DNA of 64,000 nucleotides, taken from positions 124,001 through 188,000 of IMG/VR virus record IMGVR_UViG_3300044640_001495. One strand, 5' to 3'. The notes beneath the pieces are model-generated. The model did no database searches. It was not told the origin of the DNA and saw nothing but the letters and a program-made list of their open reading frames with translations. Positions 18,065 through 41,523 of the stretch are shown piece after piece. A program made the position numbers and the translations under genes. Within the stretch, counting starts at the first letter, position 1. Every line of letters begins with the position of its first letter.

Positions 18065-18802
18065 ATGAAAGATATTTTACAAGACATCGTGTCACACACA
18101 CAAAACCTAGGCTTCTTAACCACAGTTAAAGTCACAGGCACAGACAAAGGCACAACTATCAACTCAATGGCCGATGACCGTTCAGTGATTATGGAGGCAG
18201 AAACTGCTAATCCGTACCCAGACATGATTGGTGTGTTTGGCATGCCACAATTAAACAAATTAAAATATTTGTTAGATGGTGCTGAATACAAAGAAAATGC
18301 TAAAATTTCTATTACCACAGCAGATCGCAATGGTGAAACAATTCCAACAGGCTTACACTTTGAAAACAAAGACGGCGATTTTAAAAACGACTATCGTTTT
18401 ATGAATGCTGAAATTATCAACGAAAAGATGAAGACTGTCAAGTTCCGTGGAGTTAAGTGGGATGTAGAACTAGAGCCAACTGTATCCGCAGTTCAACGTT
18501 TTAACTTCCAAGCAGGTGCTCATAACGAACATCCAACATTCTTGGCAAAGACAGACGGTGGCAACCTAAAGTTTATCTTTGGTGATGCATCAACACACGC
18601 AGGTGAGTTTATATTTGCACAAAACGTTGTAGGCAAACTTGATCGTGGTTGGACTTGGCCTGTTATGCCAATCTTAAGTATTCTTAAGATTGCAGATGTC
18701 AACAACACCAAGATGTCGTTGAGCAATGAAGGTGCTATTCAAATTACTCTTGACAGCGGCCTAGCATCATACAAATATATCATTCCAGCACAAGCGGCCT
18801 AA
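18065..18802 (+). CDS. probable sliding clamp (gp45/PCNA-like)
   Basis: 245 aa directly after polymerase; C-terminal YKYIIPA; polymerase ends in clamp-binding-like LFDF. Confidence 0.55.
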   Translation: MKDILQDIVSHTQNLGFLTTVKVTGTDKGTTINSMADDRSVIMEAETANPYPDMIGVFGMPQLNKLKYLLDGAEYKENAKISITTADRNGETIPTGLHFENKDGDFKNDYRFMNAEIINEKMKTVKFRGVKWDVELEPTVSAVQRFNFQAGAHNEHPTFLAKTDGGNLKFIFGDASTHAGEFIFAQNVVGKLDRGWTWPVMPILSILKIADVNNTKMSLSNEGAIQITLDSGLASYKYIIPAQAA

Positions 18803-18803
18803 T

Positions 18804-20348
18804 ATGAAAGAACCAGTCAATTTAACTCCACTACAAAAAGACTATGCGGTATACTTACCTGCTATTAGTTCTTTTTATAGTACCTACGTTGCTAAACAGC
18901 GATTAGAAGAATTTGTACCCAACGATCGTATTCCTGCAGGATTCGATCGTGGCATTGAAGGTATGAACTTTTTAAATCCCGAACAAGGCTACTTTACCTA
19001 CAAGTATGCTTTATATTCAGCAGGTCATGCACAATTAGATTTGAATAAGAGCATGACACAGGAGTCGATGATTCAACAGAGAGATCGTGCTAACACAATG
19101 ATCTTGGGCGACTCCGGTGGATACCAAATTGGTAAGGGTGTGTTAAAGTTTGATTGGCTCAACTTCGAAGGCCCCGCTGCAAACAAGACACGACAAAATA
19201 TTTTAGAGTGGCTTGAACTAACTGCTGATTGGTCCATGATGCTAGACGTTCCAACATGGGCATGTGATCACATTCACAGTCCCAAGACTGGATTGAAAAC
19301 ATTTGAAGATTGTCTAGAAAAGACACGATTCAATAACGATTACTTCTTGCAAAATCGTCTAGGCCAGACCAAATGGCTCAACGTACTGCAAGGCGGAGAC
19401 TGGGATACTGCTGAAAAGTGGTATAACGGCGTGAAAGAATTTAGTGATCCCAAAGGCAAATATGCCGGTAAGGAAGCAGAAGGTTGGGCAATGGGTGGCG
19501 CTAATATGTGCAAGATGCCCATTACACTAAAGAGGTTGATAACATTGAGAGACGAAGGTCTCTTAGAAGGCAAGGACTGGATGCACTTTTTAGGTACAGC
19601 ACAGCTTGACTGGTCGTGTTATCTTACATTAATTCAACGTGAAATTAAAAAGCACATAAATGAAAACTTTACCATCTCTTTTGATTGCGCCTCACCGTTC
19701 ATTGCAACAGCACACGGACTTGTCTACACCAACGCCCAGCACACCAACAAACGGTGGAGTGTTATCATGGACAAAGCCCCAGACACAAAAACCCTTAGCC
19801 AGAATTTTAACATCCCCTTCCCATTTGAAAGTGAATTCGGAAGTAGATTATCAATAGGCGATATCTGTTGGTACAAGCCTGGAATGCTTAACAAGATCAA
19901 CAAAGAAGGTAAAACTTCTTGGGATAGCTTCAGCTATGCACTAATGATGGGGCATAATGTTGAATGTCATATTAAGGCCGTACAACGTGCTCAACAATTC
20001 ATGGATATTGAATGTGCTAAACATAAGCCTGACTGGCGTATGTGGGGCGTTGAAGGCAAGAAAGAAATTGAATTCAGCGAATGGGTTCCACGCAAGATCC
20101 TTTACTTTGCCACATTCATTGAAGAATTGTTCAATACTAAAACTAAAGCCGAAGCATTTACATTGATCGACAATGCCAATCAATTCTTGACCAGTCTCGA
20201 AGGTGCTCGACTACAAGGCGGGCCAGTTGCCTATGGCAATAAAGATCTGTTTGATTGGGGTGATGCCAAGAAAGTTAAAGAAGAAGAATTTGATCAACAA
20301 GATGATGATGAGCTACGTGCATTGGAAGAAATCGTTCAAGGAGCATAA
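18804..20348 (+). CDS. dpdA: DpdA/tRNA-guanine transglycosylase-like protein
   Basis: TGT-fold motifs GDSGGYQ, MMLDVP, NVLQG, GWAMGG, HFLG, SFD; co-located with folE/queD/queE. Confidence 0.8.
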   Translation: MKEPVNLTPLQKDYAVYLPAISSFYSTYVAKQRLEEFVPNDRIPAGFDRGIEGMNFLNPEQGYFTYKYALYSAGHAQLDLNKSMTQESMIQQRDRANTMILGDSGGYQIGKGVLKFDWLNFEGPAANKTRQNILEWLELTADWSMMLDVPTWACDHIHSPKTGLKTFEDCLEKTRFNNDYFLQNRLGQTKWLNVLQGGDWDTAEKWYNGVKEFSDPKGKYAGKEAEGWAMGGANMCKMPITLKRLITLRDEGLLEGKDWMHFLGTAQLDWSCYLTLIQREIKKHINENFTISFDCASPFIATAHGLVYTNAQHTNKRWSVIMDKAPDTKTLSQNFNIPFPFESEFGSRLSIGDICWYKPGMLNKINKEGKTSWDSFSYALMMGHNVECHIKAVQRAQQFMDIECAKHKPDWRMWGVEGKKEIEFSEWVPRKILYFATFIEELFNTKTKAEAFTLIDNANQFLTSLEGARLQGGPVAYGNKDLFDWGDAKKVKEEEFDQQDDDELRALEEIVQGA

Positions 20349-20351
20349 TTT

Positions 20352-20537
20352 ATGTACGAACAGAGAATTAAACATTTGGAAGAAGCACATCATGCTTTGG
20401 ACAAACAAGTTGACACTTTGGAAAGAACAGGCCTGTTTGAAGACCTAAAATTAGAGCAATTGAAAAAAGAAAGGTTGCTCTTAAAGGATAAAATTGCTAT
20501 ACTAAAGCATAAGCAACAACTTCACACACAGGCATAA
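20352..20537 (+). CDS. DUF465/YdcH-like coiled-coil protein
   Basis: LEEAHHALDKQV...LKKERLLLKDKI pattern. Confidence 0.65.
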   Translation: MYEQRIKHLEEAHHALDKQVDTLERTGLFEDLKLEQLKKERLLLKDKIAILKHKQQLHTQA

Positions 20538-20538
20538 C

Positions 20539-20730
20539 ATGGTCCAACTGAACATATTTGAATTGAACAAAATTAAAACAATCTGCGAAGCTGTTGGCAC
20601 AGAGTATTTTACTCTTGAGCAAACAAATAGTTCAGGCATTGGTAGGGTATTAACAATGATTTATGATACAGAAATAGCAGACTATCCTGCTAGTGTTCGT
20701 GTCGAAGTATCTGGCGTGGAGACGTGGTAA
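20539..20730 (+). CDS. hypothetical protein
   Basis: 63-aa ORF in operon. Confidence 0.65.
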   Translation: MVQLNIFELNKIKTICEAVGTEYFTLEQTNSSGIGRVLTMIYDTEIADYPASVRVEVSGVETW

Positions 20731-21215
20731 TGAAACAAGAACTAGATAAGTTGTTGTGTGAGAAGTATCCTAAGATGATGGTGAACCGCAACAAGAACAT
20801 GCAGGAAACTTGTATGTGTTGGGGGTTCGAATGTGGCGATGGTTGGTTTAATATCCTAGATCAGCTTATGAGCAATATCCAACATCATATTGATTGGAAT
20901 AATCAAAATTTTGACAAAGGTTACAAGCAATACAAACAAGTTGCGCAGGTAACTCTGGATCAGGTTAAGGAAAAGTTTGGTACACTACGTTTTTACTACA
21001 CAGGTGGTGATGACATTATTGACGGTATGGTACGTATGGCAGAAAGCATGAGTGGATGTACCTGTGAGGAATGTGGCAATATCGGAAAAAGTCGCGGCGG
21101 CGGTTGGATCCATACTTACTGTGATCCTTGCGAAGAAGCACGTGAACTAGCACGTAAAAAGGCAGCTGATGAATACGAATTTAAAAAACTTCTCAAAGAA
21201 GGCAGTGAACAATGA
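20730..21215 (+). CDS. hypothetical protein with Cys pairs
   Basis: QVKEKFGTLRFY, CEECG, CDPC; TAATG coupling. Confidence 0.8.
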   Translation: MKQELDKLLCEKYPKMMVNRNKNMQETCMCWGFECGDGWFNILDQLMSNIQHHIDWNNQNFDKGYKQYKQVAQVTLDQVKEKFGTLRFYYTGGDDIIDGMVRMAESMSGCTCEECGNIGKSRGGGWIHTYCDPCEEARELARKKAADEYEFKKLLKEGSEQ

Positions 21216-21367
21216 AATGTACAACCTGTGGTCAAGCTATTTCAGAAACTTGTTCTTGGAACCAAGGACGATGCCCGCATCTGCCTAGTCTTGCAGAACA
21301 AATCATAAACAATCCCTACAAGGCACGTTTTCTTAATCTACTTAAATTTTTTAAAATCATAAAATGA
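21212..21367 (+). CDS. 51-aa Cys4 microprotein
   Basis: MKCTTCGQAISETCSWNQGRCPH...; ATGA overlaps at both ends; not in ORF track. Confidence 0.65.
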   Translation: MKCTTCGQAISETCSWNQGRCPHLPSLAEQIINNPYKARFLNLLKFFKIIK

Positions 21368-21891
21368 AAAGAAATTATTCCACTGGTATAGAAACTGCTA
21401 TAGAGTTTTTTACAGGCATTGAGATCGAAAAGACTCCTGCACATGGCATGAAAACACTGTTTGTTGTAGGAGTGCATGACGATCAAATTATTACCACCAT
21501 GGCCAAGAACAATGATTGCACACACATCTATTTTGGTGCTAATCAAAGTTTTAAAACCGATGGCGTTAATGATGCACACAATTGGCGCATGTGGGAAGAC
21601 ATGATCTATGTCTGCTTGGAAGAGGGCTACTGGTGTACACTAGACTTAGATGTCAGTGAAGTTGAAGGACTTCTTGAAAGCGGGCTTGTTGAGAAACAGC
21701 AGTTTATTCCGCAGATTTCGGTTAAACTGCCCTATTTACAACAGCTGGGATATAATGCTACAATAAAGATAGACGACAAAGATTTTAAGGCAACAAATCC
21801 TGGAGTGTGGTGCCATAACCTCCATGACCTACTTGGTAGAGACAAGTTTACCAGTTGGGATCAATATGGCAAAGATGAGATTATAAAATGA
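21364..21891 (+). CDS. hypothetical protein
   Basis: 175 aa, HIYFGANQSF motif; coupled in deazaguanine region. Confidence 0.85.
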   Translation: MKRNYSTGIETAIEFFTGIEIEKTPAHGMKTLFVVGVHDDQIITTMAKNNDCTHIYFGANQSFKTDGVNDAHNWRMWEDMIYVCLEEGYWCTLDLDVSEVEGLLESGLVEKQQFIPQISVKLPYLQQLGYNATIKIDDKDFKATNPGVWCHNLHDLLGRDKFTSWDQYGKDEIIK

Positions 21892-22268
21892 GTGGTGGAT
21901 ATGCAGTAGCATCAACAGCAAAGCAGAGACGGGTTCCGCGAATGACCGGCTCTAATCAAGTAAATCGTGCAAGACAATATATACAACAAAAACCTATGAA
22001 ATTATCAATTAGAGAACGAATTCGAAACTGGCTGTTAAAAGACGTTGACGACGCCGAGCTAGTATACGCTGAGGATTGCGACGGCGTTGACCTACATTCT
22101 CAAGGTTTCCGTTTACAAGTTTATGGTGCTAGCGGTGGTACTATTGTAGAGACAACTAAGTACGACCAAAAGAAAGATGAGAATCGTCACAGTCTATACG
22201 TGGTCACTGAAGACAAAGATCTCGGTCAAGAATTAGCAAAAATTATAACCATGGAGCAACTGCGATGA
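21888..22268 (+). CDS. hypothetical protein
   Basis: 126-aa coupled ORF. Confidence 0.8.
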   Translation: MSGGYAVASTAKQRRVPRMTGSNQVNRARQYIQQKPMKLSIRERIRNWLLKDVDDAELVYAEDCDGVDLHSQGFRLQVYGASGGTIVETTKYDQKKDENRHSLYVVTEDKDLGQELAKIITMEQLR

Positions 22269-22492
22269 AACATCCCAATCTAGATGTAAAAAAAATCACG
22301 ATAAAAGAAACTGATGCATACAGAGTTCGTGTTGAAAGTTGGGAAAGTATAAGTCCACAAGGACTGTTTGCAGTAGATATCATTCAAGAATGTTTAGACA
22401 CTGAGAAAAATATCACTGAATCCAGTACCTACAATTTTCACATGACTAGAGAAGAAATTAAAACGCTGTGCGAAGGACTGTTGTCATTATGA
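22265..22492 (+). CDS. hypothetical protein
   Basis: 75-aa coupled ORF. Confidence 0.75.
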   Translation: MKHPNLDVKKITIKETDAYRVRVESWESISPQGLFAVDIIQECLDTEKNITESSTYNFHMTREEIKTLCEGLLSL

Positions 22493-22878
22493 TTATCAAA
22501 CAAGACATTAGACCCAACAAAATGATTTGGGTTACCTTTCAGAAAGAAGGTATGCACAAATATCCAGCGGCGCTGACAGACCCAGCACTTGCTACAGGAG
22601 ATGAATATGATGTAAGTTTCCTAGGCTATCCGCATCGGCATATCTTCCACTTTAAAGTTTGGATTGGTGTTACCCACGATGATCGAGATATTGAGTTTAT
22701 TCAGTTTAAACGATGGTTGCTAAATCTTTATAAAGATGCTACACTTAGTTTAGACTACAAGAGTTGTGAAATGATGTCAGGCGATTTGTATGACGTCATT
22801 AACAAAAAGTATCCAGGTCGTGAGGTTTGGATTGAGGTCTCCGAAGACGGAGAAAATGGTTCATTTATTAAGTACTAA
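22489..22878 (+). CDS. queD: QueD-like 6-carboxytetrahydropterin synthase (T-fold)
   Basis: HxY...PHRHIFHF, IEF, SCEM, VSEDGENG; ATG 22489 coupled. Confidence 0.75.
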   Translation: MIIKQDIRPNKMIWVTFQKEGMHKYPAALTDPALATGDEYDVSFLGYPHRHIFHFKVWIGVTHDDRDIEFIQFKRWLLNLYKDATLSLDYKSCEMMSGDLYDVINKKYPGREVWIEVSEDGENGSFIKY

Positions 22879-22891
22879 AAGGAAAGCTATA

Positions 22892-23149
22892 ATGGCTAAG
22901 AATTACAGAGATTATTCCTATTTTGAAAATCGTCCCGACGTTGTTCGGATCTTTGATGACTTGGATACATATCTAGATTGGTGTAGATTAGAACTGCAAC
23001 CATTTAATCCTGCAGATCTCTATAAGAGAGATTCTGTAACTTATCAGTCTTACCTGGCAAGTCGTCGTCCAGCAAGACGCCCATATTTAGGCAACAAGCC
23101 TCGTTGGGACAATAACGGTCGTCGCAATGAGCAGAATTTTTCTCGTTGA
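22892..23149 (+). CDS. hypothetical protein
   Basis: ATG 22892 with AAGGA SD. Confidence 0.75.
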   Translation: MAKNYRDYSYFENRPDVVRIFDDLDTYLDWCRLELQPFNPADLYKRDSVTYQSYLASRRPARRPYLGNKPRWDNNGRRNEQNFSR

Positions 23150-24230
23150 TCTAGAAGCAGTTGAGACAAGGTACACGGGTCAATGGAAGACTCATGTACC
23201 TGCACTCTTACGAAAGGCAGGACACAATGTCAACATTATATCAGGTCCTACGGACATTCCTAGTGCTACCACTCCTGGGGCATTTCTCAACTTTGGCGGC
23301 ACTAATATCTACAAGGCTAGTCAAGTTGAGCAGATGGGCCGTTTATTTTGTTCCGGAGCAGTTAAGCCTGGCGATCATTTTTTGTTTACTGACGCTTGGC
23401 ATCCTGGTATCATAAACTTAAAGTATATGAGCGAGTTGCTGGGCATTCCAATAACAACACATGGCTTATGGCATGCTGGTTCATATGATCCGCAAGACTT
23501 CCTAGGACGTCTTGTTGGCAACAAGCCTTGGGTGCGTAATGCAGAGAAATCGTTCTTTTCTGCCTTTGATCACAACTACTTTGCCACTGACTTTCATATT
23601 GAATTGTTTAATAGAGAATTACTGAACAATGGGCATACTGTAGAAAATCCTTGGTACGAGGAAGAACTTAAAGAAATACTTGCAGGCGAGTATCCTAAGT
23701 TTGTACGCACAGGTTGGCCTATGGAGTATATGCAGGACACTTTGCTAATGTATAAGAACATGAAGAAGCGTGATCTTATTCTATTCCCGCATCGTGTTGC
23801 TCCAGAGAAACAGGTTGAAATATTCCGTGATCTAAAACATCAGTTGCCGCAATATGAATTTGTTGTTTGTCAAGATCAACAGTTGACCAAAAATGAATAT
23901 CACAATTTGTTAGGTGAAGCAAAAATGGTATTCAGTGCCAATCTACAAGAAACACTGGGTATCAGTTGGTACGAAGGTGCTATTGTGGATGCTATTCCAA
24001 TGGTGCCGGATCGCCTAAGCTATAGCGAAATGGCTCTTGATACATTTAAGTATCCTAGCAAATGGACTGAAAGTTTTGAAGCATATACTGTATATCGTCC
24101 AGACATCTGTAAAACAATTATAGAACATATGGAAAATTACAGAACTCGTATATCTAGCCTAAATAAACAGGTAGATATACTAAAAGAAAACTTTTTTAGT
24201 TGCAATAAACTATTAGAGATGTTAAAATAA
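23127..24230 (+). CDS. GT-B fold glycosyltransferase
   Basis: FTDAWHPG, HAGS, ILFPHR..PEKQ, ETLGISWYEG (ExFG...E-type signature). Confidence 0.8.
   Translation: MSRIFLVDLEAVETRYTGQWKTHVPALLRKAGHNVNIISGPTDIPSATTPGAFLNFGGTNIYKASQVEQMGRLFCSGAVKPGDHFLFTDAWHPGIINLKYMSELLGIPITTHGLWHAGSYDPQDFLGRLVGNKPWVRNAEKSFFSAFDHNYFATDFHIELFNRELLNNGHTVENPWYEEELKEILAGEYPKFVRTGWPMEYMQDTLLMYKNMKKRDLILFPHRVAPEKQVEIFRDLKHQLPQYEFVVCQDQQLTKNEYHNLLGEAKMVFSANLQETLGISWYEGAIVDAIPMVPDRLSYSEMALDTFKYPSKWTESFEAYTVYRPDICKTIIEHMENYRTRISSLNKQVDILKENFFSCNKLLEMLK
24200..24228 (+). promoter_or_regulatory. sigma70-type promoter upstream of folE
   Basis: TTGCAA-N17-TAAAAT. Confidence 0.55.
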
Positions 24231-24272
24231 TATAACAAATGTCATCCACGACATTAACTCGGAGAAATAAAA

Positions 24273-25016
24273 TTGACAAGTAAAGAAACAGGCTTGGACG
24301 CAATGGCAGGCGATGGCGGATATGAAGAAGCATACCTATCAGATGTACTTCGCTTTAAAATGAAGCGTGAAGGAAAACGCTTTTGGGCAGGCGATAACAT
24401 CAGCGACTATCTGTATGAAGGCGATATAGAACGACTAATTGACGAAGCAACGCCCGCATTTGAACAAGTGCTAGACAAGTTGCTCATTGATCGCGAGAAC
24501 GATCCTAACAGTAAAGGTACAGCCCGTCGACTGGCTAAAATGTACTTCAATGAAATCATGGAAGGTAGATATCAAGCTGCTCCAGATTGTACTGCTTTTC
24601 CCAACGATAGTGAGGATAGATATGAGGGTATGTTGGTTGTTCGCAGTGAGCTTCGTAGCATGTGCAGTCACCATCACCAGCCTGTGGCTGGCGTCGCGTA
24701 TATCGGTATCATCGCCGCACAAAAACTTATCGGCTTGTCAAAGTACACAAGAATAGCACAGTGGTGTGCTAGACGTGGTACTCTGCAAGAAGAACTATGT
24801 AACGACATTGCCCGTGAGATTAGCAAGGCAACTGATAGCGACAATGTAGCAGTCTATATACAGGCCACACATGGTTGCTGTGAGAATCGTGGCATCATGG
24901 CACACTCTAGTCTAACACAGACTACAGTACTTAAAGGTTCGTTTAAAGATGATCCTCACACAAAGAAAGAGTTTTTTGATAACATCAAACTACAACAAGA
25001 GTTTGCACCACGATAA
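24273..25016 (+). CDS. folE: GTP cyclohydrolase I
   Basis: SMCSHHHQP, IGLSKYTRI, LQEEL, HGCCENRG; TTG start with GGAG SD. Confidence 0.95.
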   Translation: MTSKETGLDAMAGDGGYEEAYLSDVLRFKMKREGKRFWAGDNISDYLYEGDIERLIDEATPAFEQVLDKLLIDRENDPNSKGTARRLAKMYFNEIMEGRYQAAPDCTAFPNDSEDRYEGMLVVRSELRSMCSHHHQPVAGVAYIGIIAAQKLIGLSKYTRIAQWCARRGTLQEELCNDIAREISKATDSDNVAVYIQATHGCCENRGIMAHSSLTQTTVLKGSFKDDPHTKKEFFDNIKLQQEFAPR

Positions 25017-25024
25017 GGAATATC

Positions 25025-25528
25025 ATGAGCCAAGTATATGTAATTAAACCTCTAGAGAAGAAAAGCATTGTCTACCATGTAGAAATGTATCGTAATAATC
25101 CAGACGGTAGCGTCGGTTGGTTTAACCTCGACGAAACATATCGTTGGGGGCAAGGCTTTGTAGAAGGCGACCTAGATTGCAATCTTCCTTGGGAAGGTGA
25201 CGATGTTGCCTATGCCAGAGCAGATGTGGGCTGGGGTTGCGAGTTCGATGATAGTTGTAGCATCGAATTTGAATTCAGCGATGATATCGACGAGGCTGAA
25301 CAAGAATCTATTCGTGAAGCCTATTACGAAGGCGGCGCTGGCTGGCTGTTTGACGGTGAGCATGAATGGCTGGAAGAAGACACTGCTGTACACATCATTG
25401 CGCCTTATCAGGTAGATCTGTGCGAAGATGATGGTACAGTCATTGAAGAAAATGTTAAACTTAAACCAAGGCCTGATCCAAGAACTTCTTGGCCGTGGAG
25501 TGTAGATAATCCTAAACCAGAAGAATAG
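25025..25528 (+). CDS. acidic hypothetical protein
   Basis: 167 aa, SD AAGGA. Confidence 0.8.
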   Translation: MSQVYVIKPLEKKSIVYHVEMYRNNPDGSVGWFNLDETYRWGQGFVEGDLDCNLPWEGDDVAYARADVGWGCEFDDSCSIEFEFSDDIDEAEQESIREAYYEGGAGWLFDGEHEWLEEDTAVHIIAPYQVDLCEDDGTVIEENVKLKPRPDPRTSWPWSVDNPKPEE

Positions 25529-25532
25529 CATT

Positions 25533-25751
25533 ATGACTACCGCAAAAGAACTAACCGATAATTTAATTAATCGTGCAAAAAACTTGCAGGAGTTTGTTGT
25601 AGAACGAGACTGGGATTTAATTCCCGCTGGTGTAATCAAATATAACATACAGCACACTGTGGGCCAACCTGCACGTATCTTTGTACACGCAATGACACAA
25701 CAAGAAGCAGAGCGTCAAGTAGATGATTGGTTTGGTGAAGGTGTAGAATGA
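25533..25751 (+). CDS. hypothetical protein
   Basis: 72-aa ORF. Confidence 0.7.
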   Translation: MTTAKELTDNLINRAKNLQEFVVERDWDLIPAGVIKYNIQHTVGQPARIFVHAMTQQEAERQVDDWFGEGVE

Positions 25752-26167
25752 TTAAACCTCTACGTAATGACCTAATGGTACAACAACAGGTAGACGATGC
25801 TTGGCAGCATTTTGTCGGTGTAATCATGCTGAATCAAACTGGACGCAAAGCTGTAAAGACCACGCTACCAGAATTCCTATATTGGTTTCCTACAGCACTA
25901 TCTTTGTTACACGCAGACGAAGAGTTTGTCAAAAGCATTATCCAACCCTTGGGAATGGTTAATGTTCGCTATAGTCGTTTGATTAGAATGAGTCAAGACT
26001 ATTTGACTTGGGACGGAAATGATGCTACAAAGTTATATGGCATTGGAAAATACGGCAGCGACAGCTATGAAATTTTTTACAAGAACAATTATGGCGTAAT
26101 GCCTACGGACAAAGAATTAATAAGATACCTCAAGGAAGAAGTTGAAAATGTTTTTGAAACTGCTTGA
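25748..26167 (+). CDS. MBD4-like HhH-GPD DNA glycosylase
   Basis: WQHFVGVIMLNQT, FP, QPLGM, LYGIGKYGSDSYEIF, VMPTDKEL (catalytic Asp position). Confidence 0.85.
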   Translation: MIKPLRNDLMVQQQVDDAWQHFVGVIMLNQTGRKAVKTTLPEFLYWFPTALSLLHADEEFVKSIIQPLGMVNVRYSRLIRMSQDYLTWDGNDATKLYGIGKYGSDSYEIFYKNNYGVMPTDKELIRYLKEEVENVFETA

Positions 26168-26600
26168 ACAGTTAGGTCGCAAACGTATCATTTTTGATCG
26201 TGTTTGCAACGAGCCTTACCTAGAACGCTACTATGTGTTTTTAAAAGATCGAACGCACTTTCCATTCAACATATTCTTACACAAATTCCTAAAAGGTGAT
26301 CCCGATGATGTACATGATCATCCGTGGCCTTACGCCACTCTAATTTTAAAAGGAGGTTACTACGAATACACTCCTAATTTTGAATATGGCAAAATGGTCG
26401 GAGAAACTAAGCATTGGCGCGGGCCTGGACACTTTCGAATCTGTAGTTCTAATAGCTATCATCGTATCGAATTAAAACAAGGAGTCACTGCTTGGACTCT
26501 GTTCATGCCCGGCCCACACAAACGCGATTGGGGATTTTTAGTCAACAACAAATGGATTCAACACGAGCAGTATCTTAAGGAGCGTCATGGAAAAGCGTAA
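26148..26600 (+). CDS. cupin-fold protein
   Basis: LHKF..GD..VHDHPW..LKGGY.E and YHRI...WTLF motifs. Confidence 0.7.
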   Translation: MFLKLLEQLGRKRIIFDRVCNEPYLERYYVFLKDRTHFPFNIFLHKFLKGDPDDVHDHPWPYATLILKGGYYEYTPNFEYGKMVGETKHWRGPGHFRICSSNSYHRIELKQGVTAWTLFMPGPHKRDWGFLVNNKWIQHEQYLKERHGKA

Positions 26601-27132
26601 AGTAAGTTGGCAAGAGTTTCAAGGCCTAGTGGCAAAGATTTGTAGAGATATTTCTCTAAATAAATGGCGCCCAGATTACGTAGTAGGCATTACCCGAGGC
26701 GGGCTATTGCCTGCTGTCATGATCAGTCAGTATTTTAATATTCCCTGCGAAACACTGAAAGTAAGTCTACGAGACAACGGCGGTGATCATGCCACTGAAA
26801 GCAATCTTTGGATGTCTGAAGATGCATTCGGTTATCCTATATACGACCTTATGGTGTCAGGCGGTGAAAAAAAGAATATACTGGTAGTAGACGATATCAA
26901 CGATACAGGTGCAACTATTAACTGGATTTTAAACGATTGGCAATCTGGATGTTTACCCGATGACGAAAGATGGCTTGACGAAATATGGAATCAAAATGTA
27001 AAGTTTGCCACAATATTCGATAACCTTGCCAGCGAGTCCAAAGTCAAAATGGACTATGTTGGGGAAGAGATCAACAAAGCAGAAAATCCTGTATGGATTG
27101 AATTTCCCTTTGAAGAGTGGTGGACTAAATGA
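26587..27132 (+). CDS. type I phosphoribosyltransferase (purine PRT-like)
   Basis: VVGITRGGLLPA, ILVVDDINDTGAT PRPP-binding motif. Confidence 0.88.
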   Translation: MEKRKVSWQEFQGLVAKICRDISLNKWRPDYVVGITRGGLLPAVMISQYFNIPCETLKVSLRDNGGDHATESNLWMSEDAFGYPIYDLMVSGGEKKNILVVDDINDTGATINWILNDWQSGCLPDDERWLDEIWNQNVKFATIFDNLASESKVKMDYVGEEINKAENPVWIEFPFEEWWTK

Positions 27133-27509
27133 GAAAAGAAGATTACATACTAGCAGATGCAGAGAAGGAAGGTATTGCACCGTGGAAGGACTTGGTCCGG
27201 GAAGACTTCCATGTCAAGGTCTTTAAAGATAAGTACCCTGTATCCGAAGGTCATTTGTTGTTTGTGCCGCAGTATGCAGCCGATGGAGTGATTGTCGACT
27301 GCTTTAGTGATGCACTAACACACGGCAAAGATATGGTAGAGAAAGGTGAGTGGGATGGATTTAATATTGGAATCAATTGGGGTGAGGCAGCGGGTCAGAC
27401 CGTAATGTACCCGCATATACATCTAATTCCAAGACGCAAAGGAGACATGGCGGATCCTCGTGGCGGTGTTAGACATGTTATTCCAGAAAAAGGAAATTAT
27501 AAAAAATGA
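27129..27509 (+). CDS. HIT-family hydrolase
   Basis: KYPVSEGHLLFVP, GFNIGIN.G.AAGQTV..PHIHLIPRR. Confidence 0.9.
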   Translation: MRKEDYILADAEKEGIAPWKDLVREDFHVKVFKDKYPVSEGHLLFVPQYAADGVIVDCFSDALTHGKDMVEKGEWDGFNIGINWGEAAGQTVMYPHIHLIPRRKGDMADPRGGVRHVIPEKGNYKK

Positions 27510-28324
27510 GCAGAGCTTTATTCATAGGTGATAGTCAAACTTGTGGCTACTGGAGTCACCCGACTAAAGTAGGGCCGGGTAGTTATTCTTATTGGAACGA
27601 CAACAACTATGCAGAAATCTACGGAGAAGATAATAACAAACCCGTAGCTATATATGCAATGGCAGGTGTTTGTAATCGAGTCTACACTGATTGGCTAGCT
27701 AACATGTTTAAAAAATATGATGATATAGACGAAGTGTTTATATGTCTAGCACCATTCAATAGATTTAGACTGGCTTTTGACGGTGAGTTGTCTGACGAAA
27801 TTATACCCATTGACTACTTTACCGAAAAGATGAGTGCGTCCGATGGTGTCGTTGATAGGTATTGTGATCAAACTATACAAAATGAAAAAATACAACTATT
27901 TCAGAAATCACGCGATAAAGACTACAGTAATTTTCCCGGGCTAGATATTGACATGGGCAAAGGACTGGCATCACCAAATCTTCGTAAAAACACCTATATG
28001 GAAGTTAAGTTATTTTTTGAACTTAATACATTTTTAGAAAAACGTGATTTTTTACTAGATGTCTATGTATGGGATCGCATGTGTGCGGAACATGGTGCCA
28101 AACTTTATCTTTTTAATTTTACAGAACGATTAAAATTTCCTAGTAATTTTGAATATTATGGAAAATTAAACAATACTGTGATTGCTACTAAAACCGTTGA
28201 AGCCTATCTCGCTGACAAACTAATAGACCATACAAAATTCTATCTAGAAGACAACGAACATTATAATCGTGAATATCACAAGTATATCTCGGATAAATAT
28301 CTGCCCTGGTTAAAGACACAATGA
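27506..28324 (+). CDS. SGNH/GDSL-like protein
   Basis: FIGDSQ N-terminal motif and C-terminal DNEH. Confidence 0.6.
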   Translation: MSRALFIGDSQTCGYWSHPTKVGPGSYSYWNDNNYAEIYGEDNNKPVAIYAMAGVCNRVYTDWLANMFKKYDDIDEVFICLAPFNRFRLAFDGELSDEIIPIDYFTEKMSASDGVVDRYCDQTIQNEKIQLFQKSRDKDYSNFPGLDIDMGKGLASPNLRKNTYMEVKLFFELNTFLEKRDFLLDVYVWDRMCAEHGAKLYLFNFTERLKFPSNFEYYGKLNNTVIATKTVEAYLADKLIDHTKFYLEDNEHYNREYHKYISDKYLPWLKTQ

Positions 28325-28896
28325 AAATATTGATTGCGGGAGACAGTTTTGCTACTGTATGGCCGAATGCCGAGTTGGGTTGGCCTACACTGCTCGCTGC
28401 AAAATACAATGTGGTTAATCTAGCACAGGCGGGCATAGGAGAATACAAGATTCTAAAACAAATCGAATCTCAGCATGTTGCAAGTTTTGACATGGTGATT
28501 GTGAGTCATACCAGTCCCAGTCGACTGCATACCCCGCAACATCCCATACATAAACAAGGGCTGCATAAAGATTGTGATTTGATTTTAAATGATCTGCTCG
28601 ATAGGTCTTCATTTAGAAATCCCAGTCTTAAGGCCGCACAAGAATATTTCAAATATCATTATGATGATCAATATCAAATAGACATTTATAATTTAATTAG
28701 AAAACAGATCAAACTGTTGATCACTGTGCCATATATCAGCATGAGTCATATTGATATTGTTAATCAACTTGCAGTAGAAAACAATCATATTGATTTTAGT
28801 GGCCTTTGGTCTAAGGAGCGAGGAAATATAAATCATTATACCATTGAAGGCAATTCTAAAATATTTGAAACATTAAAGGACATCATCAGTGCATGA
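28321..28896 (+). CDS. SGNH/GDSL-like protein
   Basis: IAGDSF, NLAQAG, NHY motifs. Confidence 0.65.
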   Translation: MKILIAGDSFATVWPNAELGWPTLLAAKYNVVNLAQAGIGEYKILKQIESQHVASFDMVIVSHTSPSRLHTPQHPIHKQGLHKDCDLILNDLLDRSSFRNPSLKAAQEYFKYHYDDQYQIDIYNLIRKQIKLLITVPYISMSHIDIVNQLAVENNHIDFSGLWSKERGNINHYTIEGNSKIFETLKDIISA

Positions 28897-29086
28897 AATT
28901 CTGGTTCCGTGGAATAAAGAACAAACTGGGTTTTGGTGGAATGAAACTTGTGCTATGGTATTGGAACACTTTGGCCTGCCAGGCGATCGATATACCAGTC
29001 ATCCAGAGACCGATCAGATGACATTTAAATTTCATAACGAACACGATGCTATGATGTGCAAAATATTGTTAAGCGACAGAATATGA
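28889..29086 (+). CDS. hypothetical protein
   Basis: 65-aa coupled ORF. Confidence 0.7.
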   Translation: MHEILVPWNKEQTGFWWNETCAMVLEHFGLPGDRYTSHPETDQMTFKFHNEHDAMMCKILLSDRI

Positions 29087-29280
29087 TCAAATACATTGTT
29101 GGATTTATTGTTGCTTGCGTCCTTTGGATAATTGTACTTTCTCGAGTAGAGCTTCCCGAATATCGAGTGTACGATTGTAGTATGGCTGAATGGCATCCTG
29201 ATATTCCCATCGATGTAAAAGAAGAATGTCGTAAGCGTAGATATCAAGATTGGAAACATAAAAACGACAATGCCATTTAA
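29083..29280 (+). CDS. small membrane-anchored protein
   Basis: N-terminal TM then YDC..EWHP...C. Confidence 0.7.
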   Translation: MIKYIVGFIVACVLWIIVLSRVELPEYRVYDCSMAEWHPDIPIDVKEECRKRRYQDWKHKNDNAI

Positions 29281-29287
29281 TTAGGAG

Positions 29288-29476
29288 TTGAAATTGAAAA
29301 ATTGGACAGTTACCGTTGAAGAAGATCTCGACACAGGTGATCTTGTTTTGCCGTTACCTCAAGATATGCTCAATCTACAAGGTTGGGTAGAAGGCGACAC
29401 ATTAGAATGGATAGATCAAAAAGATGGTAGTTGGCAACTCAAAAAGGTTGACACAACTAGTGAAAAGAGTGTATAA
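29288..29476 (+). CDS. AbrB/MazE-like swapped-hairpin protein
   Basis: GDLVLPLPQ...GW.EGDTLEW; TTG start with AGGAG SD. Confidence 0.6.
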   Translation: MKLKNWTVTVEEDLDTGDLVLPLPQDMLNLQGWVEGDTLEWIDQKDGSWQLKKVDTTSEKSV

Positions 29477-29477
29477 T
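29448..29477 (+). promoter_or_regulatory. sigma70-type promoter for queE
   Basis: TTGACA-N18-TATAAT; ATG 5 nt after -10. Confidence 0.8.
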
Positions 29478-29482
29478 ATACT

Positions 29483-30346
29483 ATGAGCAAAATTAAAATC
29501 GCAGAGCTGTTTTACAGCATACAAGGTGAAGGTAGATACATGGGTGTGCCTAGTGTATTCTTACGCACATTCGGGTGTAACTTTAAATGTGCCGGCTTCG
29601 GTATGCCTCGTGGGGAAGTAAGTCACGAAGCTACTGACATTGCGGCTACACATAAAATGATTACGCCTTTTACAAAGTATGAAGATTTACCATTAGTTAG
29701 TACTGGATGTGACAGCTACGCTAGTTGGCATCCTGACTTTAAAGAGTTGTCGCCTATGCTTACTAGCGAAGCAATCGTAGAACGAATTATGGAAATTATT
29801 CCGTTTGAAGAATGGCGTGATGAACATCTGGTTATCACAGGTGGCGAACCTTTGCTAGGTTGGCAACGTGCTTATCCTGATTTGTTGAATCATCCAAAGA
29901 TGGGCAAGTTAAAAGAAATTACTTTTGAAACAAATGGTACTCAGAAACTAACTCCAGAGTTTAAACAGTATCTAAAACAATGGGCACAGAATCCGCCATT
30001 TGCCTCTAGAGAAATTACATTCTCAGTAAGTGCTAAACTTCCTTGCAGTGGCGAAAAGTGGGAAGAAGCTATCCTTCCAGAAGTCGTTTGCGAGTACGAA
30101 GAAGTTGGTACAGCATATTTGAAGTTTGTTATTGCTACAGAACAAGACTTTGCTGATGCCGAGTGTGCGATTGCCGCATATCGTAAAGTAGGCTTTACAG
30201 GTCATGTATATCTAATGCCGGTAGGCGGCGTGGAAAGTGTCTACGCATTAAACAATAAGAATGTAGCATTGCTAGCAATGAAAAACGGACTACGTTATAG
30301 TGACCGTTTACAAGTGCCGCTGTTTAAAAATGAGTGGGGTACCTAA
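29483..30346 (+). CDS. queE: 7-carboxy-7-deazaguanine synthase (radical SAM)
   Basis: ELFYSIQGEG..G.PSVFLRTFGC, CDS, VITGGEP, ETNG, LMP, RLQV. Confidence 0.9.
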   Translation: MSKIKIAELFYSIQGEGRYMGVPSVFLRTFGCNFKCAGFGMPRGEVSHEATDIAATHKMITPFTKYEDLPLVSTGCDSYASWHPDFKELSPMLTSEAIVERIMEIIPFEEWRDEHLVITGGEPLLGWQRAYPDLLNHPKMGKLKEITFETNGTQKLTPEFKQYLKQWAQNPPFASREITFSVSAKLPCSGEKWEEAILPEVVCEYEEVGTAYLKFVIATEQDFADAECAIAAYRKVGFTGHVYLMPVGGVESVYALNNKNVALLAMKNGLRYSDRLQVPLFKNEWGT

Positions 30347-41506: not shown

Positions 41507-41523
41507 GTATCTAGTATAGATTA

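What the first reader, a model, noticed from the sequence alone, without database searches (positions are those of the whole stretch)
18804..30346. 7-deazaguanine DNA-modification pathway with no QueC in view
Seen: a DpdA/TGT-like gene right after polymerase and clamp, plus QueD-like, FolE and QueE genes; no QueC, QueF or Gat-QueC in 64 kb. Established: FolE-QueD-QueE make CDG, QueC is needed for preQ0, and phage DpdA enzymes insert deazaguanines into DNA. Inference: the product is dCDG or a further-decorated base, or host QueC is borrowed. Many uncharacterised coupled ORFs between these genes could be tailoring enzymes.
Basis: partly seen in the sequence, partly recalled or inferred. Interest (0 to 1): 0.7.

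Follow-up and report, generated by a model that had tools for sequence, protein, structure and literature searches.

The report
QueC-less deazaguanine DNA module with glycosyltransferase
A lake-water jumbo phage carries a gene set for replacing guanine in its DNA with a 7-deazaguanine made without QueC (through the known QueD look-alike DpdL), and the set also holds a conserved sugar-transferase and a purine salvage enzyme that nobody has yet explained.

Summary
The genes are real, but two points need correcting. The 'QueD-like' ORF (22468-22878) is DpdL, the QueD paralogue proposed as CDG decarboxylase in phiST-type phages. The true QueD lies about 26 kb upstream of the window.

- **TGT-like enzyme:** the 514-aa ORF after polymerase and clamp matches no Pfam, PHROG or NCBIfam model. 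Its model (pLDDT 91) is a TGT fold (VIA-align Z 18), with invariant DSGGYQ and FDC motifs. It belongs to an unnamed clade closest to DpdA2.
- **No QueC or QueF:** none in the 199 kb held, none above Pfam's cut-off in five complete cultured relatives (X1 has one 16-bit match), and none in five long IMG/VR relatives.
- **Known core:** this is the QueC-less FolE-QueD-QueE-DpdL-DpdA route of Cui et al. 2023, whose product in phiST is 2'-deoxy-7-deazaguanosine.
- **GT4 glycosyltransferase (23127-24230):** it sits in the module in about ten lineages. It is present in 6 of 6 complete genomes with a large DpdA and in 0 of 5 without. One relative adds a sugar kinase and a nucleotidyltransferase.
- **XGPRT-like PRTase:** within the phage collection it is almost confined to deazaguanine phages.

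PA5oct, the closest cultured relative, has restriction-resistant DNA of unknown chemistry. The final base may therefore be a sugar-decorated deazaguanine. This is untested.

The parts
15336..18005 (+). Family-B DNA polymerase (context; syntenic anchor)
   Evidence: Pfam DNA_pol_B 1e-34 and exonuclease domain 3e-19. It is 50% identical to the PA5oct and Phosso polymerases.
18065..18802 (+). Sliding-clamp-like protein (context)
   Evidence: phrog_12062, 3.5e-37. It is 35% identical to the Phosso protein annotated as a sliding clamp.
18804..20348 (+). TGT-fold enzyme, candidate DNA deazaguanine transglycosylase (DpdA-like, unnamed clade nearest DpdA2)
   Evidence: AF2 pLDDT 91.4. The Foldseek PDB top 50 are all TGT, E about 2e-7. 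VIA-align Z 18.2 over residues 11-437. D103, S104, G106, H261 and D294 are invariant in 47 homologues. hhalign against ACP17/X1/BCSR5 DpdA2-like proteins gives 98%, E 2e-13; against phiST DpdA3 it gives 70%. BFVD ranks nt-1 DpdA2 at 2e-9 and phiST DpdA3 at 1.7e-3.
21364..21891 (+). p175, conserved protein of unknown function that travels with the DpdA gene
   Evidence: It lies directly beside DpdA in L008, L009, L010 and ACP17. It is present in 21 of 22 full-flank relatives. AF2 pLDDT is 66 with a beta/alpha pattern. No significant fold match.
22468..22878 (+). DpdL, QueD paralogue proposed as CDG decarboxylase
   Evidence: tblastn: ACP17 55%, E 3e-35; phiST 31%, E 9e-6. Motif L-GYP-HRH-I-F. 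H30, H56 and H58 are invariant. The family is defined in PMC10516641.
22892..23149 (+). Small basic protein, conserved in the lineage, function unknown
   Evidence: Present in 20 of 22 full-flank relatives. No family match. The longest ORF starts at 22790 and overlaps DpdL.
23127..24230 (+). GT4-type (GT-B) glycosyltransferase embedded in the module
   Evidence: Homologues lie next to DpdL or DpdA in PA5oct, Phosso, ACP17, X1/BUDD, BCSR5, BUCT-ZZ01, L009, L011 and L012. Five of six homologues hit PF00534, best 8e-12. E275-x7-E283 is invariant. The PDB profile hits are all GT4. Atlas neighbours are GT1/GT4.
24273..25016 (+). FolE, GTP cyclohydrolase I
   Evidence: Pfam PF01227 4e-40. PHROG 4.5e-45.
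25748..26167 (+). MBD4-like HhH-GPD DNA glycosylase (variable accessory gene)
   Evidence: Pfam HhH-GPD 1e-7. PDB MBD4 glycosylase domain 2.5e-18. Found in only 3 of 22 full-flank relatives.
26142..26600 (+). Cupin protein (near-core in this lineage), function unknown
   Evidence: phrog_4786 'cysteine dioxygenase' 2.8e-36. Weak cupin hits in PDB. Present in 17 of 22 relatives.
26587..27132 (+). 6-oxopurine (XGPRT-like) phosphoribosyltransferase
   Evidence: Pfam Pribosyltran 4.5e-14. The best NCBIfam match is xanthine PRTase, below cut-off. PDB purine PRTases score 1.5e-7. Homologues sit inside the deazaguanine clusters of PA5oct, BUCT-ZZ01 and immuto_2-6A and are also present in phiST; 21 of the 22 phage records that hold one are such phages. 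Present in 18 of 22 relatives.
27129..27509 (+). HIT-family nucleotide hydrolase/transferase
   Evidence: Pfam HIT 1.2e-9. It is 56% identical to the HIT gene in the same position of L009. Present in 11 of 22 relatives.
27506..28896 (+). Two translationally coupled ORFs with N-terminal GDS motifs (possible SGNH hydrolases); variable
   Evidence: GDS motifs are visible in the translations. The only match is Pfam Lipase_GDSL_2 at E 0.17. Found in 3 of 22 relatives. Assignment is weak.
29483..30346 (+). QueE, 7-carboxy-7-deazaguanine synthase (radical SAM)
   Evidence: PHROG QueE-like 2.3e-48. NCBIfam QueE models match in part, below their cut-offs. C32, C76, TGGEP and ETNG are conserved with the PA5oct, ACP17, X1 and phiST QueE proteins.

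Best explanation
The locus is a QueC-independent module for modifying the phage's DNA with a 7-deazaguanine. The proposed steps are below, each marked shown or inferred.

1. **Base synthesis.** FolE, QueD (encoded about 26 kb upstream of the window) and QueE convert GTP to the free base 7-carboxy-7-deazaguanine (CDG). This follows from family membership and the established pathway.
2. **Conversion by DpdL.** DpdL, a QueD paralogue lacking the catalytic Cys, converts CDG to 7-deazaguanine. This is inferred from Cui et al. 2023. The enzyme activity has never been shown; the product dDG was measured in phiST DNA.
3. **Insertion into DNA.** The 514-aa TGT-fold enzyme, encoded right after the polymerase and clamp genes, exchanges guanine in phage DNA for this base. 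This is inferred from its fold, its catalytic motifs and its gene linkage.
4. **Decoration.** The conserved GT4 glycosyltransferase most likely decorates the inserted base or its DNA further. This is inference from linkage only.
5. **Salvage.** The XGPRT-like PRTase most likely returns the released guanine to GMP and GTP, feeding FolE again. This is inference, and an alternative role is given under the rival explanations.

The result would be restriction-resistant DNA, as seen in PA5oct.
For: - **Pathway genes identified:** FolE, QueE, QueD and DpdL.
- **TGT fold:** invariant DSGGYQ, HxLG and FDC motifs in 47 homologues.
- **Relation to DpdA2-type enzymes:** hhalign 98%. ACP17's enzyme is 36% identical to nt-1 and VH7D DpdA2.
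- **Independent context for the same TGT clade:** in Vibrio phage 2.275.O it sits beside QueF, a YhhQ-like transporter and FolE.
- **QueC:** absent from the 199-kb record. No match above cut-off in five complete cultured relatives and none in five long metagenomic relatives.
- **QueF:** absent from the 199-kb record; the relatives were not searched for it.
- **Published definition fits:** DpdL is described as occurring in phages with DpdA, FolE, QueD and QueE but no QueC, and dDG fully replaces dG in phiST.
- **Cultured relative:** PA5oct shares the syntenic module. [quoted passage not shown]
- **GT4 linkage:**
- **Sugar-activation genes:** a GHMP kinase and an NTP_transferase lie next to the GT in L009. 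A PIG-L deacetylase lies in the BCSR5 cluster.
- **PRTase linkage:**
Against: - No chemistry is available for this phage or for any phage with the GT-bearing module.
- DpdL activity has never been shown. ACP17 DpdL plus its DpdA gave no dDG in E. coli.
- Plain 7-deazaguanine has no obvious hydroxyl acceptor for a GT4 enzyme.
- The window's own GT copy does not itself reach Pfam PF00534.
- The TGT-like protein matches no curated TGT or DpdA model.
- The record is only about 53% complete, so a queC elsewhere cannot be strictly excluded for this phage.
- The runs holding this sequence are kept only as assembled contigs, so they carry no modification signal.
Confidence: 0.6

Rival explanations
1. 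Incorporation happens at the nucleotide level, before replication. The XGPRT-like PRTase joins the deazaguanine base (DG or CDG) to PRPP. Cellular or phage kinases and ribonucleotide reductase then yield the deoxynucleoside triphosphate, and the phage polymerase builds it in. The TGT-like enzyme only patches remaining G or has another role. This can coexist with the main explanation.
For: - The PRTase is embedded in the deazaguanine clusters of four unrelated phage groups, and 21 of the 22 phage records that hold a homologue are deazaguanine phages.
- phiST and immuto_2-6A also carry MazG-like NTP pyrophosphohydrolases in their clusters.
- Both of those phages show 100% replacement.
- An ADG nucleoside was reported in CP220-infected cells (cited).
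- From my own knowledge: PRTases that accept CDG or preQ0 exist in tubercidin and toyocamycin biosynthesis (TubE, ToyH).
- A HIT nucleotide enzyme is translationally coupled to the PRTase here.
Against: - A TGT-fold enzyme with intact catalytic motifs is conserved in every relative: 22 of 22 full-flank loci.
- Cui et al. argue that all known cases are post-replicative.
- Guanine salvage explains the PRTase equally well.
- No dedicated kinase or dGTP-destroying enzyme was identified in the region.
Confidence: 0.15
2. The DNA carries dCDG itself. DpdL is not a decarboxylase, and the TGT-like enzyme inserts CDG, possibly followed by esterification or glycosylation of the carboxylate.
For: - DpdL activity is unproven, and heterologous ACP17 and phiST DpdL gave no dDG.
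- VH7D DpdA2 can insert CDG in a queC-deleted host.
- A carboxylate would offer the GT an acceptor.
Against: - In phiST, the only DpdL phage group analysed chemically, CDG was not detected and dDG replaced all dG.
- DpdL is conserved with invariant metal-binding His residues, which argues for an active enzyme.
Confidence: 0.12
3. The phage borrows host QueC, or has queC in the unsequenced half of its genome, and makes ordinary dPreQ0, dADG or dG+.
For: - The record is about 53% complete.
- Some phages do rely on host enzymes (PMC6884629).
Against: - There is no QueC above cut-off in five complete genomes with the same module, and none in five long relatives.
- The presence of DpdL defines the QueC-less class.
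- Encoding FolE, QueD and QueE but relying on the host for one step is unparsimonious.
Confidence: 0.06
4. The GT4 has nothing to do with the deazaguanine. It glycosylates another target, such as a hydroxymethyl-pyrimidine, a virion or host protein, or a cell-envelope component, and it is only a neighbour.
For: - Phage genomes often carry GTs for other purposes.
- The acceptor problem on plain DG.
- PA5oct and Phosso do encode ThyA-family enzymes.
- RHph_I1_18, Ahp1, D479 and phiST have DpdL without this GT.
Against: - The GT lies between or next to DpdA, DpdL and QueE in about ten lineages that share little else.
- It is present in 6 of 6 complete genomes with a large DpdA and in 0 of 5 without.
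- ACP17, BCSR5 and X1 have no ThyA-family enzyme.
Confidence: 0.3

Closest known systems
Cellulophaga phage phiST dDG system (FolE, QueD, QueE, DpdL, DpdA3; Cui et al. 2023, PMC10516641)
   Same: - It has FolE, QueD (of the CxxxHGY type), QueE and DpdL (LxxxHRHxF), and it has no QueC.
- A TGT-superfamily enzyme is encoded near the polymerase.
- An XGPRT-like PRTase is present in the genome.
   Different: - phiST's transglycosylase is a 259-aa DpdA3, only weakly related to the 514-aa enzyme here (hhalign 70%; BFVD 1.7e-3).
- phiST has no GT4 homologue and no p175.
- phiST has a MazG-like enzyme and an ATPase in its cluster.
Pseudomonas jumbo phage PA5oct (Wroclawvirus) cluster EST35_0311-0325
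   Same: - The order is syntenic: PolB, clamp-like, TGT-like (43.5% identity), GT4 (41%), DpdL (56%), PRTase (22%), QueE (31%), 5'-3' exonuclease.
- There is no QueC.
- Its DNA resists G-containing restriction sites.
- Iyer et al. 2021 noted a deazaguanine synthesis and incorporation system in it.
   Different: - PA5oct lacks a detectable p175.
- It has a short epimerase-like ORF in the cluster.
- Its FolE and QueD lie elsewhere in the genome.
- Its DpdL motif reads HFH rather than HRH.
- Its modification has not been identified chemically.
DpdA2 systems (Vibrio phages nt-1 and VH7D; Acidovorax phage ACP17)
   Same: - DpdA2 is the nearest described transglycosylase subfamily by profile (98%) and by structure.
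- ACP17 has the same GT4, DpdL and p175 genes around its DpdA.
   Different: - nt-1 and VH7D encode QueC and insert preQ0, preQ1 or G+.
- Sequence identity to the enzyme here is about 21% over the catalytic core.
- The enzyme here has extra N- and C-terminal parts.
Nucleic-acid glycosyltransferases: T4 alpha/beta-glucosyltransferases (hmC in DNA) and QTMAN/GTDC1 (mannosyl-queuosine in tRNA)
   Same: - They are GT-B enzymes that add a sugar to an already modified base inside a nucleic acid.
- A QTMAN-family cluster is among the structural neighbours of the GT's Atlas relative (TM 0.74).
   Different: - No specific relation was shown: generic GT4 clusters score the same or better, and no Pfam QTMAN_N match was found.
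- The acceptor here is unknown.
Deazapurine nucleoside antibiotic pathways (tubercidin TubE, toyocamycin ToyH); from my own knowledge, not tested here
   Same: FolE-, QueD- and QueE-type enzymes are combined with a PRTase that can attach a 7-deazapurine base to PRPP.
   Different: - Those pathways make free nucleosides in Streptomyces.
- The PRTase here is of the XGPRT or archaeal Gpt type, and its substrate is unknown.

Membership tests
DpdA / TGT superfamily (DNA deazaguanine transglycosylase) | TGT-type (beta/alpha)8 barrel fold | tested here: met
   AF2 pLDDT 91.4. The Foldseek PDB top 50 are all TGT. VIA-align Z 18.2, about 300 residues aligned.
DpdA / TGT superfamily (DNA deazaguanine transglycosylase) | Two catalytic aspartates, in DSGG(F/Y)Q and (F/Y)D(C/S) motifs (Z. 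mobilis TGT D102 and D280; numbering from my own knowledge) | tested here: met
   D103-S-G-G-Y-Q and F-D294-C are in the sequence. D103, S104, G106 and D294 are invariant in 47 homologues. The same motifs align in the hhalign comparison with ACP17-type DpdA.
DpdA / TGT superfamily (DNA deazaguanine transglycosylase) | Match to the curated sequence model (Pfam PF01702 TGT) | tested here: not met
   No Pfam, PHROG or NCBIfam hit. PF01702 finds nothing in the record. A profile of the family finds no TGT chain in PDB.
DpdA / TGT superfamily (DNA deazaguanine transglycosylase) | Membership of one of the named subfamilies (bDpdA, DpdA1-4) | tested here: inconclusive
   The nearest is DpdA2 (hhalign 98%, E 2e-13, 21% identity; nt-1 2e-9). 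DpdA3 is weak. bDpdA and DpdA4 were not compared directly. No tree was built.
DpdA / TGT superfamily (DNA deazaguanine transglycosylase) | Gene linkage with deazaguanine base synthesis genes | tested here: met
   This window; PA5oct; L009 and L012; Vibrio 2.275.O with QueF, YhhQ and FolE.
DpdA / TGT superfamily (DNA deazaguanine transglycosylase) | Base exchange on DNA rather than tRNA | not testable with these tools
   Needs an enzyme assay or genetics.
DpdL (proposed CDG decarboxylase, QueD paralogue) | Homology to phiST CGPG_00067 and ACP17 DpdL | tested here: met
   tblastn: 55% identity, E 3e-35 (ACP17); 31% identity, E 9e-6 (phiST).
DpdL (proposed CDG decarboxylase, QueD paralogue) | Signature LxxxHRHxF in place of QueD's CxxxHGH | tested here: met
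   FLGYPHRHIFHF in the translation. L52, H56, H58 and F60 are invariant in 10 sequences.
DpdL (proposed CDG decarboxylase, QueD paralogue) | Occurs with DpdA, FolE, QueD and QueE and without QueC | tested here: met
DpdL (proposed CDG decarboxylase, QueD paralogue) | CDG decarboxylase activity | not testable with these tools
   This has not been shown for any family member either.
QueE (7-carboxy-7-deazaguanine synthase) | Radical-SAM core with three cluster cysteines, a GGE SAM motif and a match to a QueE family model | tested here: met
   PHROG QueE-like 2.3e-48. C32, C36 and C76 with a 39-residue insert; TGGEP and ETNG are conserved with phage QueEs. NCBIfam QueE models match only in part and below their cut-offs.
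QueD (CPH4 synthase) | PTPS fold family with the catalytic Cys in a CxxxHG(H) motif | tested here: met
   PF01242 51.9 bits, over the cut-off, outside the window. The motif is HCNLIHGY, the same CxxxHGY as in the phiST, ACP17 and BCSR5 QueD proteins.
GT4 / Glycos_transf_1 glycosyltransferases | GT-B C-terminal domain with an E-x7-E motif and a match to PF00534 | tested here: inconclusive
   E275-x7-E283 is invariant. Five of six homologues hit PF00534 (best 8e-12), but the window copy itself does not. PDB profile hits are all GT4 but weak, E 0.005-0.2.
6-oxopurine phosphoribosyltransferases (XGPRT/Gpt type) | Type-I PRTase fold with a PRPP loop; equivalog-level match | tested here: inconclusive
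   Pfam Pribosyltran 52.5 bits, over the cut-off. The VVDDINDTG PRPP motif is in the sequence. NCBIfam xanthine PRTase scores 41 bits against a cut-off of 138. PDB purine PRTases score 1.5e-7. The substrate is unknown.

The most novel reading that the evidence does not exclude
Phages that combine a large DpdA (this clade or the DpdA2-like clade) with DpdL and the GT4 do not stop at 7-deazaguanine. They attach a sugar to the deazaguanine in DNA, for example at the electron-rich C7 or on a DpdL- or cupin-derived function. This would be the first glycosylated purine in any natural DNA. The XGPRT-like PRTase would be a dedicated part of the system, either as a guanine recycling loop or as a nucleotide-level entry route. 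The lineage is abundant in lakes, with more than 7000 homologues in metagenomes. Six cultured phages (PA5oct, ACP17, Phosso, X1/BUDD, BCSR5, BUCT-ZZ01) could settle the matter with one LC-MS run each.
Probability: 0.35. Interest if true: 0.85.

Novelty: new variant of a known kind. Interest (0 to 1): 0.62.

Why it matters
7-Deazaguanine DNA is one of the main ways phages escape restriction and some CRISPR nucleases. Eight derivatives are known, and none carries a sugar.

The work here has five consequences:

- **The missing QueC is resolved.** It is explained by the known DpdL route.
- **A large TGT clade is defined.** Curated models miss it, yet it is very abundant in freshwater viromes.
- **Two recurrent components are flagged.** Neither the GT4 nor the purine PRTase is mentioned in the main text of Cui et al. 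2023 (PMC10516641), the paper that defines the pathway.
- **A published failure may be explained.** If the GT acts on the base, the described pathway is incomplete for a whole class of phages. That could explain why ACP17 DpdL plus DpdA gave no product in E. coli.
- **The PRTase bears on an open question.** It is relevant to whether complete G replacement is purely post-replicative.

All of this is directly testable in cultured phages, including the therapy candidate PA5oct.

Tried and rejected
- **Near-identical DNA in the phage collection:** none found.
- **Curated models on the TGT-like protein:** Pfam, PHROG and NCBIfam gave nothing. A family profile against PDB sequences also gave nothing. 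Only structure prediction resolved it.
- **DpdA3 membership:** considered, because DpdL phages such as phiST use DpdA3. It is not supported.
- **p175 (21364-21891):** the Atlas feature search gave only weak glycoside-hydrolase-like leads. The AF2 model is mediocre, pLDDT 66. Foldseek against PDB and AFDB gave no significant named match. hhalign against the small ORFs of X1, BCSR5 and Phosso was not significant, although X1 and BCSR5 share an IG-x-E-x-E...T-x-F...H-x-Y motif.
- **Complex prediction of DpdA with p175:** no answer, so it is not evidence either way.
- **GT as a QTMAN/GTDC1 relative (a lead from memory):** a QTMAN cluster is only one of several GT4 neighbours, and there is no QTMAN_N match. 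The relation is not specific.
- **Sequencing runs:** all holders are kept as contigs, so there is no read-level signal of modification. Metatranscriptome contigs of related strains cover the region, but DNA carry-over cannot be excluded.
- **The 370-aa ORF next to the DpdA of Vibrio 2.275.O:** it is not a GT homologue.
- **The top PDB hit for the GT profile, 8xsg:** it is an Actinobacillus glucoside glucosyltransferase, which says nothing about the acceptor here.

Full report
**Setting.** The window is bases 48450-112449 of a 199,328-bp IMG/VR virus record that CheckV rates about 53% complete. It comes from lake-water metagenomes. It has no near-identical relative among 50,697 deposited phage genomes. 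The region of the finding is one long run of + strand, largely overlapping ORFs.

**What is there.**
- **Replisome genes.** A family-B polymerase lies at 15336-18005 and a clamp-like protein at 18065-18802.
- **The 514-aa ORF (18804-20348).** It follows the clamp directly and matches nothing in Pfam, PHROGs or NCBIfam. Its sequence contains GDSGGYQ and SFDCASP.
  - A search of 1.8 billion cluster representatives found 888 relatives. In an alignment of 47 of them, D103, S104, G106, H261 and D294 are invariant.
  - The AlphaFold model is confident, pLDDT 91.4. Its 50 best Foldseek matches in PDB are all tRNA-guanine transglycosylases, E about 2e-7.
- VIA-align gives Z 18.2 over residues 11-437.
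- **FolE** lies at 24273-25016 (Pfam 4e-40).
- **QueE** lies at 29483-30346 (PHROG QueE-like 2e-48). It has three conserved cysteines with a 39-residue insert before the third, plus TGGEP and ETNG motifs shared with the QueE proteins of PA5oct, ACP17, X1 and phiST.

**The 'QueD-like' gene is DpdL.**
- **Motif.** ORF 22468-22878 reads ...FLGYPHRHIFHF.... Cui et al. 2023 define DpdL, the proposed CDG decarboxylase, by exactly this change of QueD's CxxxHGH into LxxxHRHxF. [quoted passage not shown]
- **Homology.** The ORF is 55% identical to ACP17 DpdL and 31% to phiST DpdL. L52, H56, H58 and F60 are invariant in ten homologues.
- **The genuine QueD.** It lies at G000:C1:22110-22616, outside the window (PF01242, 51.9 bits). 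It has the same CxxxHGY motif as the QueD proteins of phiST, ACP17 and BCSR5.

**QueC is really absent.**
- **Own record.** PF06508 finds nothing in the 199 kb. QueF and PAPS-reductase-like PP-loop models also find nothing.
- **Complete cultured relatives.** Because the record is incomplete, I searched five complete cultured genomes that carry the same module: PA5oct, Phosso, ACP17, BCSR5 and X1. None has QueC above Pfam's cut-off; X1 has one 16-bit match.
- **Long metagenomic relatives.** Five long IMG/VR relatives have no match at all.
- **Reading.** The missing QueC is therefore the hallmark of the DpdL class. In phiST, the product of that class was shown to be 2'-deoxy-7-deazaguanosine replacing all dG.

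**Which DpdA?**
- **tblastn.** It finds the enzyme only in the PA5oct group (43.5%), in Phosso (29%) and in Vibrio phage 2.275.O (30%).
- **Against DpdA2-type enzymes.** Profile comparison with the ACP17/X1/BCSR5 enzymes gives 98% probability, E 2e-13 and 21% identity across the DSGG to (F/Y)D core. ACP17's enzyme is itself 36% identical to DpdA2 of nt-1 and VH7D.
- **Against DpdA3.** Comparison with phiST DpdA3 gives only 70%.
- **Predicted viral structures.** The order is own clade, then Motura TGT and nt-1 DpdA2 (2e-9), then DpdA1-type enzymes (about 1e-5), then phiST DpdA3 (1.7e-3).
- **Context in 2.275.O.** There the same clade sits with QueF, a YhhQ-like transporter and FolE. This independently ties it to deazaguanine metabolism.
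- **Conclusion.** It is thus a distinct, larger clade nearest DpdA2. I did not build a tree or compare it with bDpdA or DpdA4.

**A conserved module that goes beyond the published pathway.**
- **Homologues of the 367-aa ORF (23127-24230).** They lie next to DpdA or DpdL in PA5oct (41%), Phosso (50%), ACP17 (36%), X1/BUDD, BCSR5, the metagenomic contigs L009, L011 and L012, and the cyanophage BUCT-ZZ01 (hhalign 99.6%).
- **It is a GT4-type glycosyltransferase.**
  - E275-x7-E283 and an R-x3-E-K motif are invariant.
  - Five of six homologues hit PF00534.
  - The family profile finds only GT4 enzymes in PDB, though weakly.
  - Its ESM Atlas neighbours are GT1/GT4.
- **It tracks the large DpdA.** Among complete genomes, the GT is present in 6 of 6 that have a large DpdA of either clade. 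It is present in 0 of 5 DpdL or DpdA3 phages without one: RHph_I1_18, Ahp1, D479, phiST and immuto_2-6A.
- **Sugar-handling genes sit beside it.** In L009 the GT is followed by a GHMP sugar kinase, an NTP_transferase and a HIT protein 56% identical to the one here. BCSR5 has a PIG-L deacetylase in its cluster.
- **Hydroxymethyl-pyrimidines are unlikely acceptors.** ACP17, BCSR5 and X1 have no ThyA-family enzyme, and none is found in the 199 kb here.
- **p175 (21364-21891).** This second conserved partner lies directly beside DpdA in L008, L009, L010 and ACP17. Its function stays unknown.

**The PRTase.**
- **Type.** ORF 26587-27132 is a type-I PRTase, nearest to xanthine-guanine and archaeal purine PRTases.
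- **Distribution.** Only 22 of 50,697 phage records hold a homologue, and 21 of them are deazaguanine phages.
  - In PA5oct it is directly upstream of QueE.
  - In BUCT-ZZ01 it lies between QueE and QueD.
  - In immuto_2-6A it lies between QueE and FolE.
  - It is also present in phiST.
- **Prior mention.** The word 'phosphoribosyl' does not occur in the main text of Cui et al..
- **Two possible roles.** It could salvage the guanine that DpdA releases back to GMP and GTP for FolE. Or it could convert the deazaguanine base to a nucleotide for incorporation during replication. I favour the first but cannot exclude the second.

**Core versus accessory genes.** I compared 22 close relatives that have full 10-kb flanks on both sides.

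| Gene | Present in |
|---|---|
| PolB, clamp, DpdA, DpdL | 22 of 22 |
| p175, FolE | 21 of 22 |
| GT, QueE, small basic ORF | 20 of 22 |
| PRTase | 18 of 22 |
| Cupin | 17 of 22 |
| HIT | 11 of 22 |
| MBD4-like glycosylase | 3 of 22 |
| Two GDS-motif ORFs | 3 of 22 |

The MBD4-like glycosylase matches the PDB MBD4 glycosylase domain at 2.5e-18. The last two rows are variable cargo rather than part of the pathway.

**Experimental anchor.**
[quoted passage not shown] The modification was not identified (PMC12191111).
- Iyer et al. 2021 had noted a deazaguanine synthesis and incorporation system in PA5oct.
- Cui et al. could not obtain dDG from ACP17 DpdL plus DpdA in E. coli and suggested that further enzymes may be needed. 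The GT4, p175 and the PRTase are obvious candidates.
- I found no paper describing a glycosylated deazaguanine in DNA.

**Verdict.**
- **Observation.** It is real but needs two corrections: DpdL is not QueD, and QueD lies outside the window.
- **Core.** It is a new member of the known DpdL-type, QueC-less pathway.
- **Variant.** The large TGT clade together with the conserved GT4, p175 and PRTase makes it a new variant of that kind. There is a realistic but unproven chance that the final base is sugar-decorated.
- **Limit.** Nothing about the chemistry can be read from the sequence. The sequencing runs available are kept as contigs and carry no modification signal.

Noticed in passing
window 34786-39849 (+): Four tandem paralogous ORFs of about 400-440 aa are radical-SAM enzymes. 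Two of them have an N-terminal SPASM domain. They lie in a stretch of lower G+C (0.32-0.36, against about 0.40 elsewhere). Their target is unknown.
   Followed up: no
window 4500-5357 and 5851-8184 (+): The phage encodes a DnaJ (J domain plus C-terminal domain) and a ClpB-like double-AAA chaperone. A ClpB-like gene also lies upstream of the polymerase in the relative L011.
   Followed up: no
L001:2135-2983 (G000:C1, outside the window, next to QueD): A KdsA-like protein (DAHP_synth_1, E 1e-71; 3-deoxy-8-phosphooctulonate synthase type) lies directly downstream of QueD. A 210-aa ORF of unknown family lies upstream. This is a sugar-acid synthesis gene in a phage that also carries an unexplained glycosyltransferase.
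   Followed up: partly
window 25748-26167 (+): A phage-encoded homologue of the MBD4 mismatch glycosylase domain (E 2.5e-18 to PDB MBD4 chains). It is present in only 3 of 22 close relatives. Its role in a genome with modified G is unclear.
   Followed up: partly
window 41500-42000: Gene orientation and GC/AT skew flip at about 41.5 kb, from + strand genes to - strand genes. A 2579-aa ORF on the - strand runs from 56246 to 63985.
   Followed up: no
window 18804-20348 and 21364-21891; metagenome collections: The lineage is very abundant. More than 7000 proteins in the 5.8-billion-protein collection match the TGT-like enzyme, and as many match p175, mostly at 70-95% identity. They occur on contigs of up to 354 kb. 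At least 594 IMG/VR stretches encode DpdL relatives.
   Followed up: partly
L012:7879-9201: In one metagenomic relative, an IS605-type OrfB/TnpB (Cas12f-like) element sits immediately upstream of the DpdA-DpdL-GT triad.
   Followed up: no
L007:4843-5376 and L006:10267-10914: The X1 and BCSR5 clusters each contain a small PAPS-reductase-like PP-loop protein, from the same superfamily as QueC, between FolE or DpdL and the GT. It could adenylate the CDG carboxylate. No such gene is found in this phage's 199 kb.
   Followed up: partly
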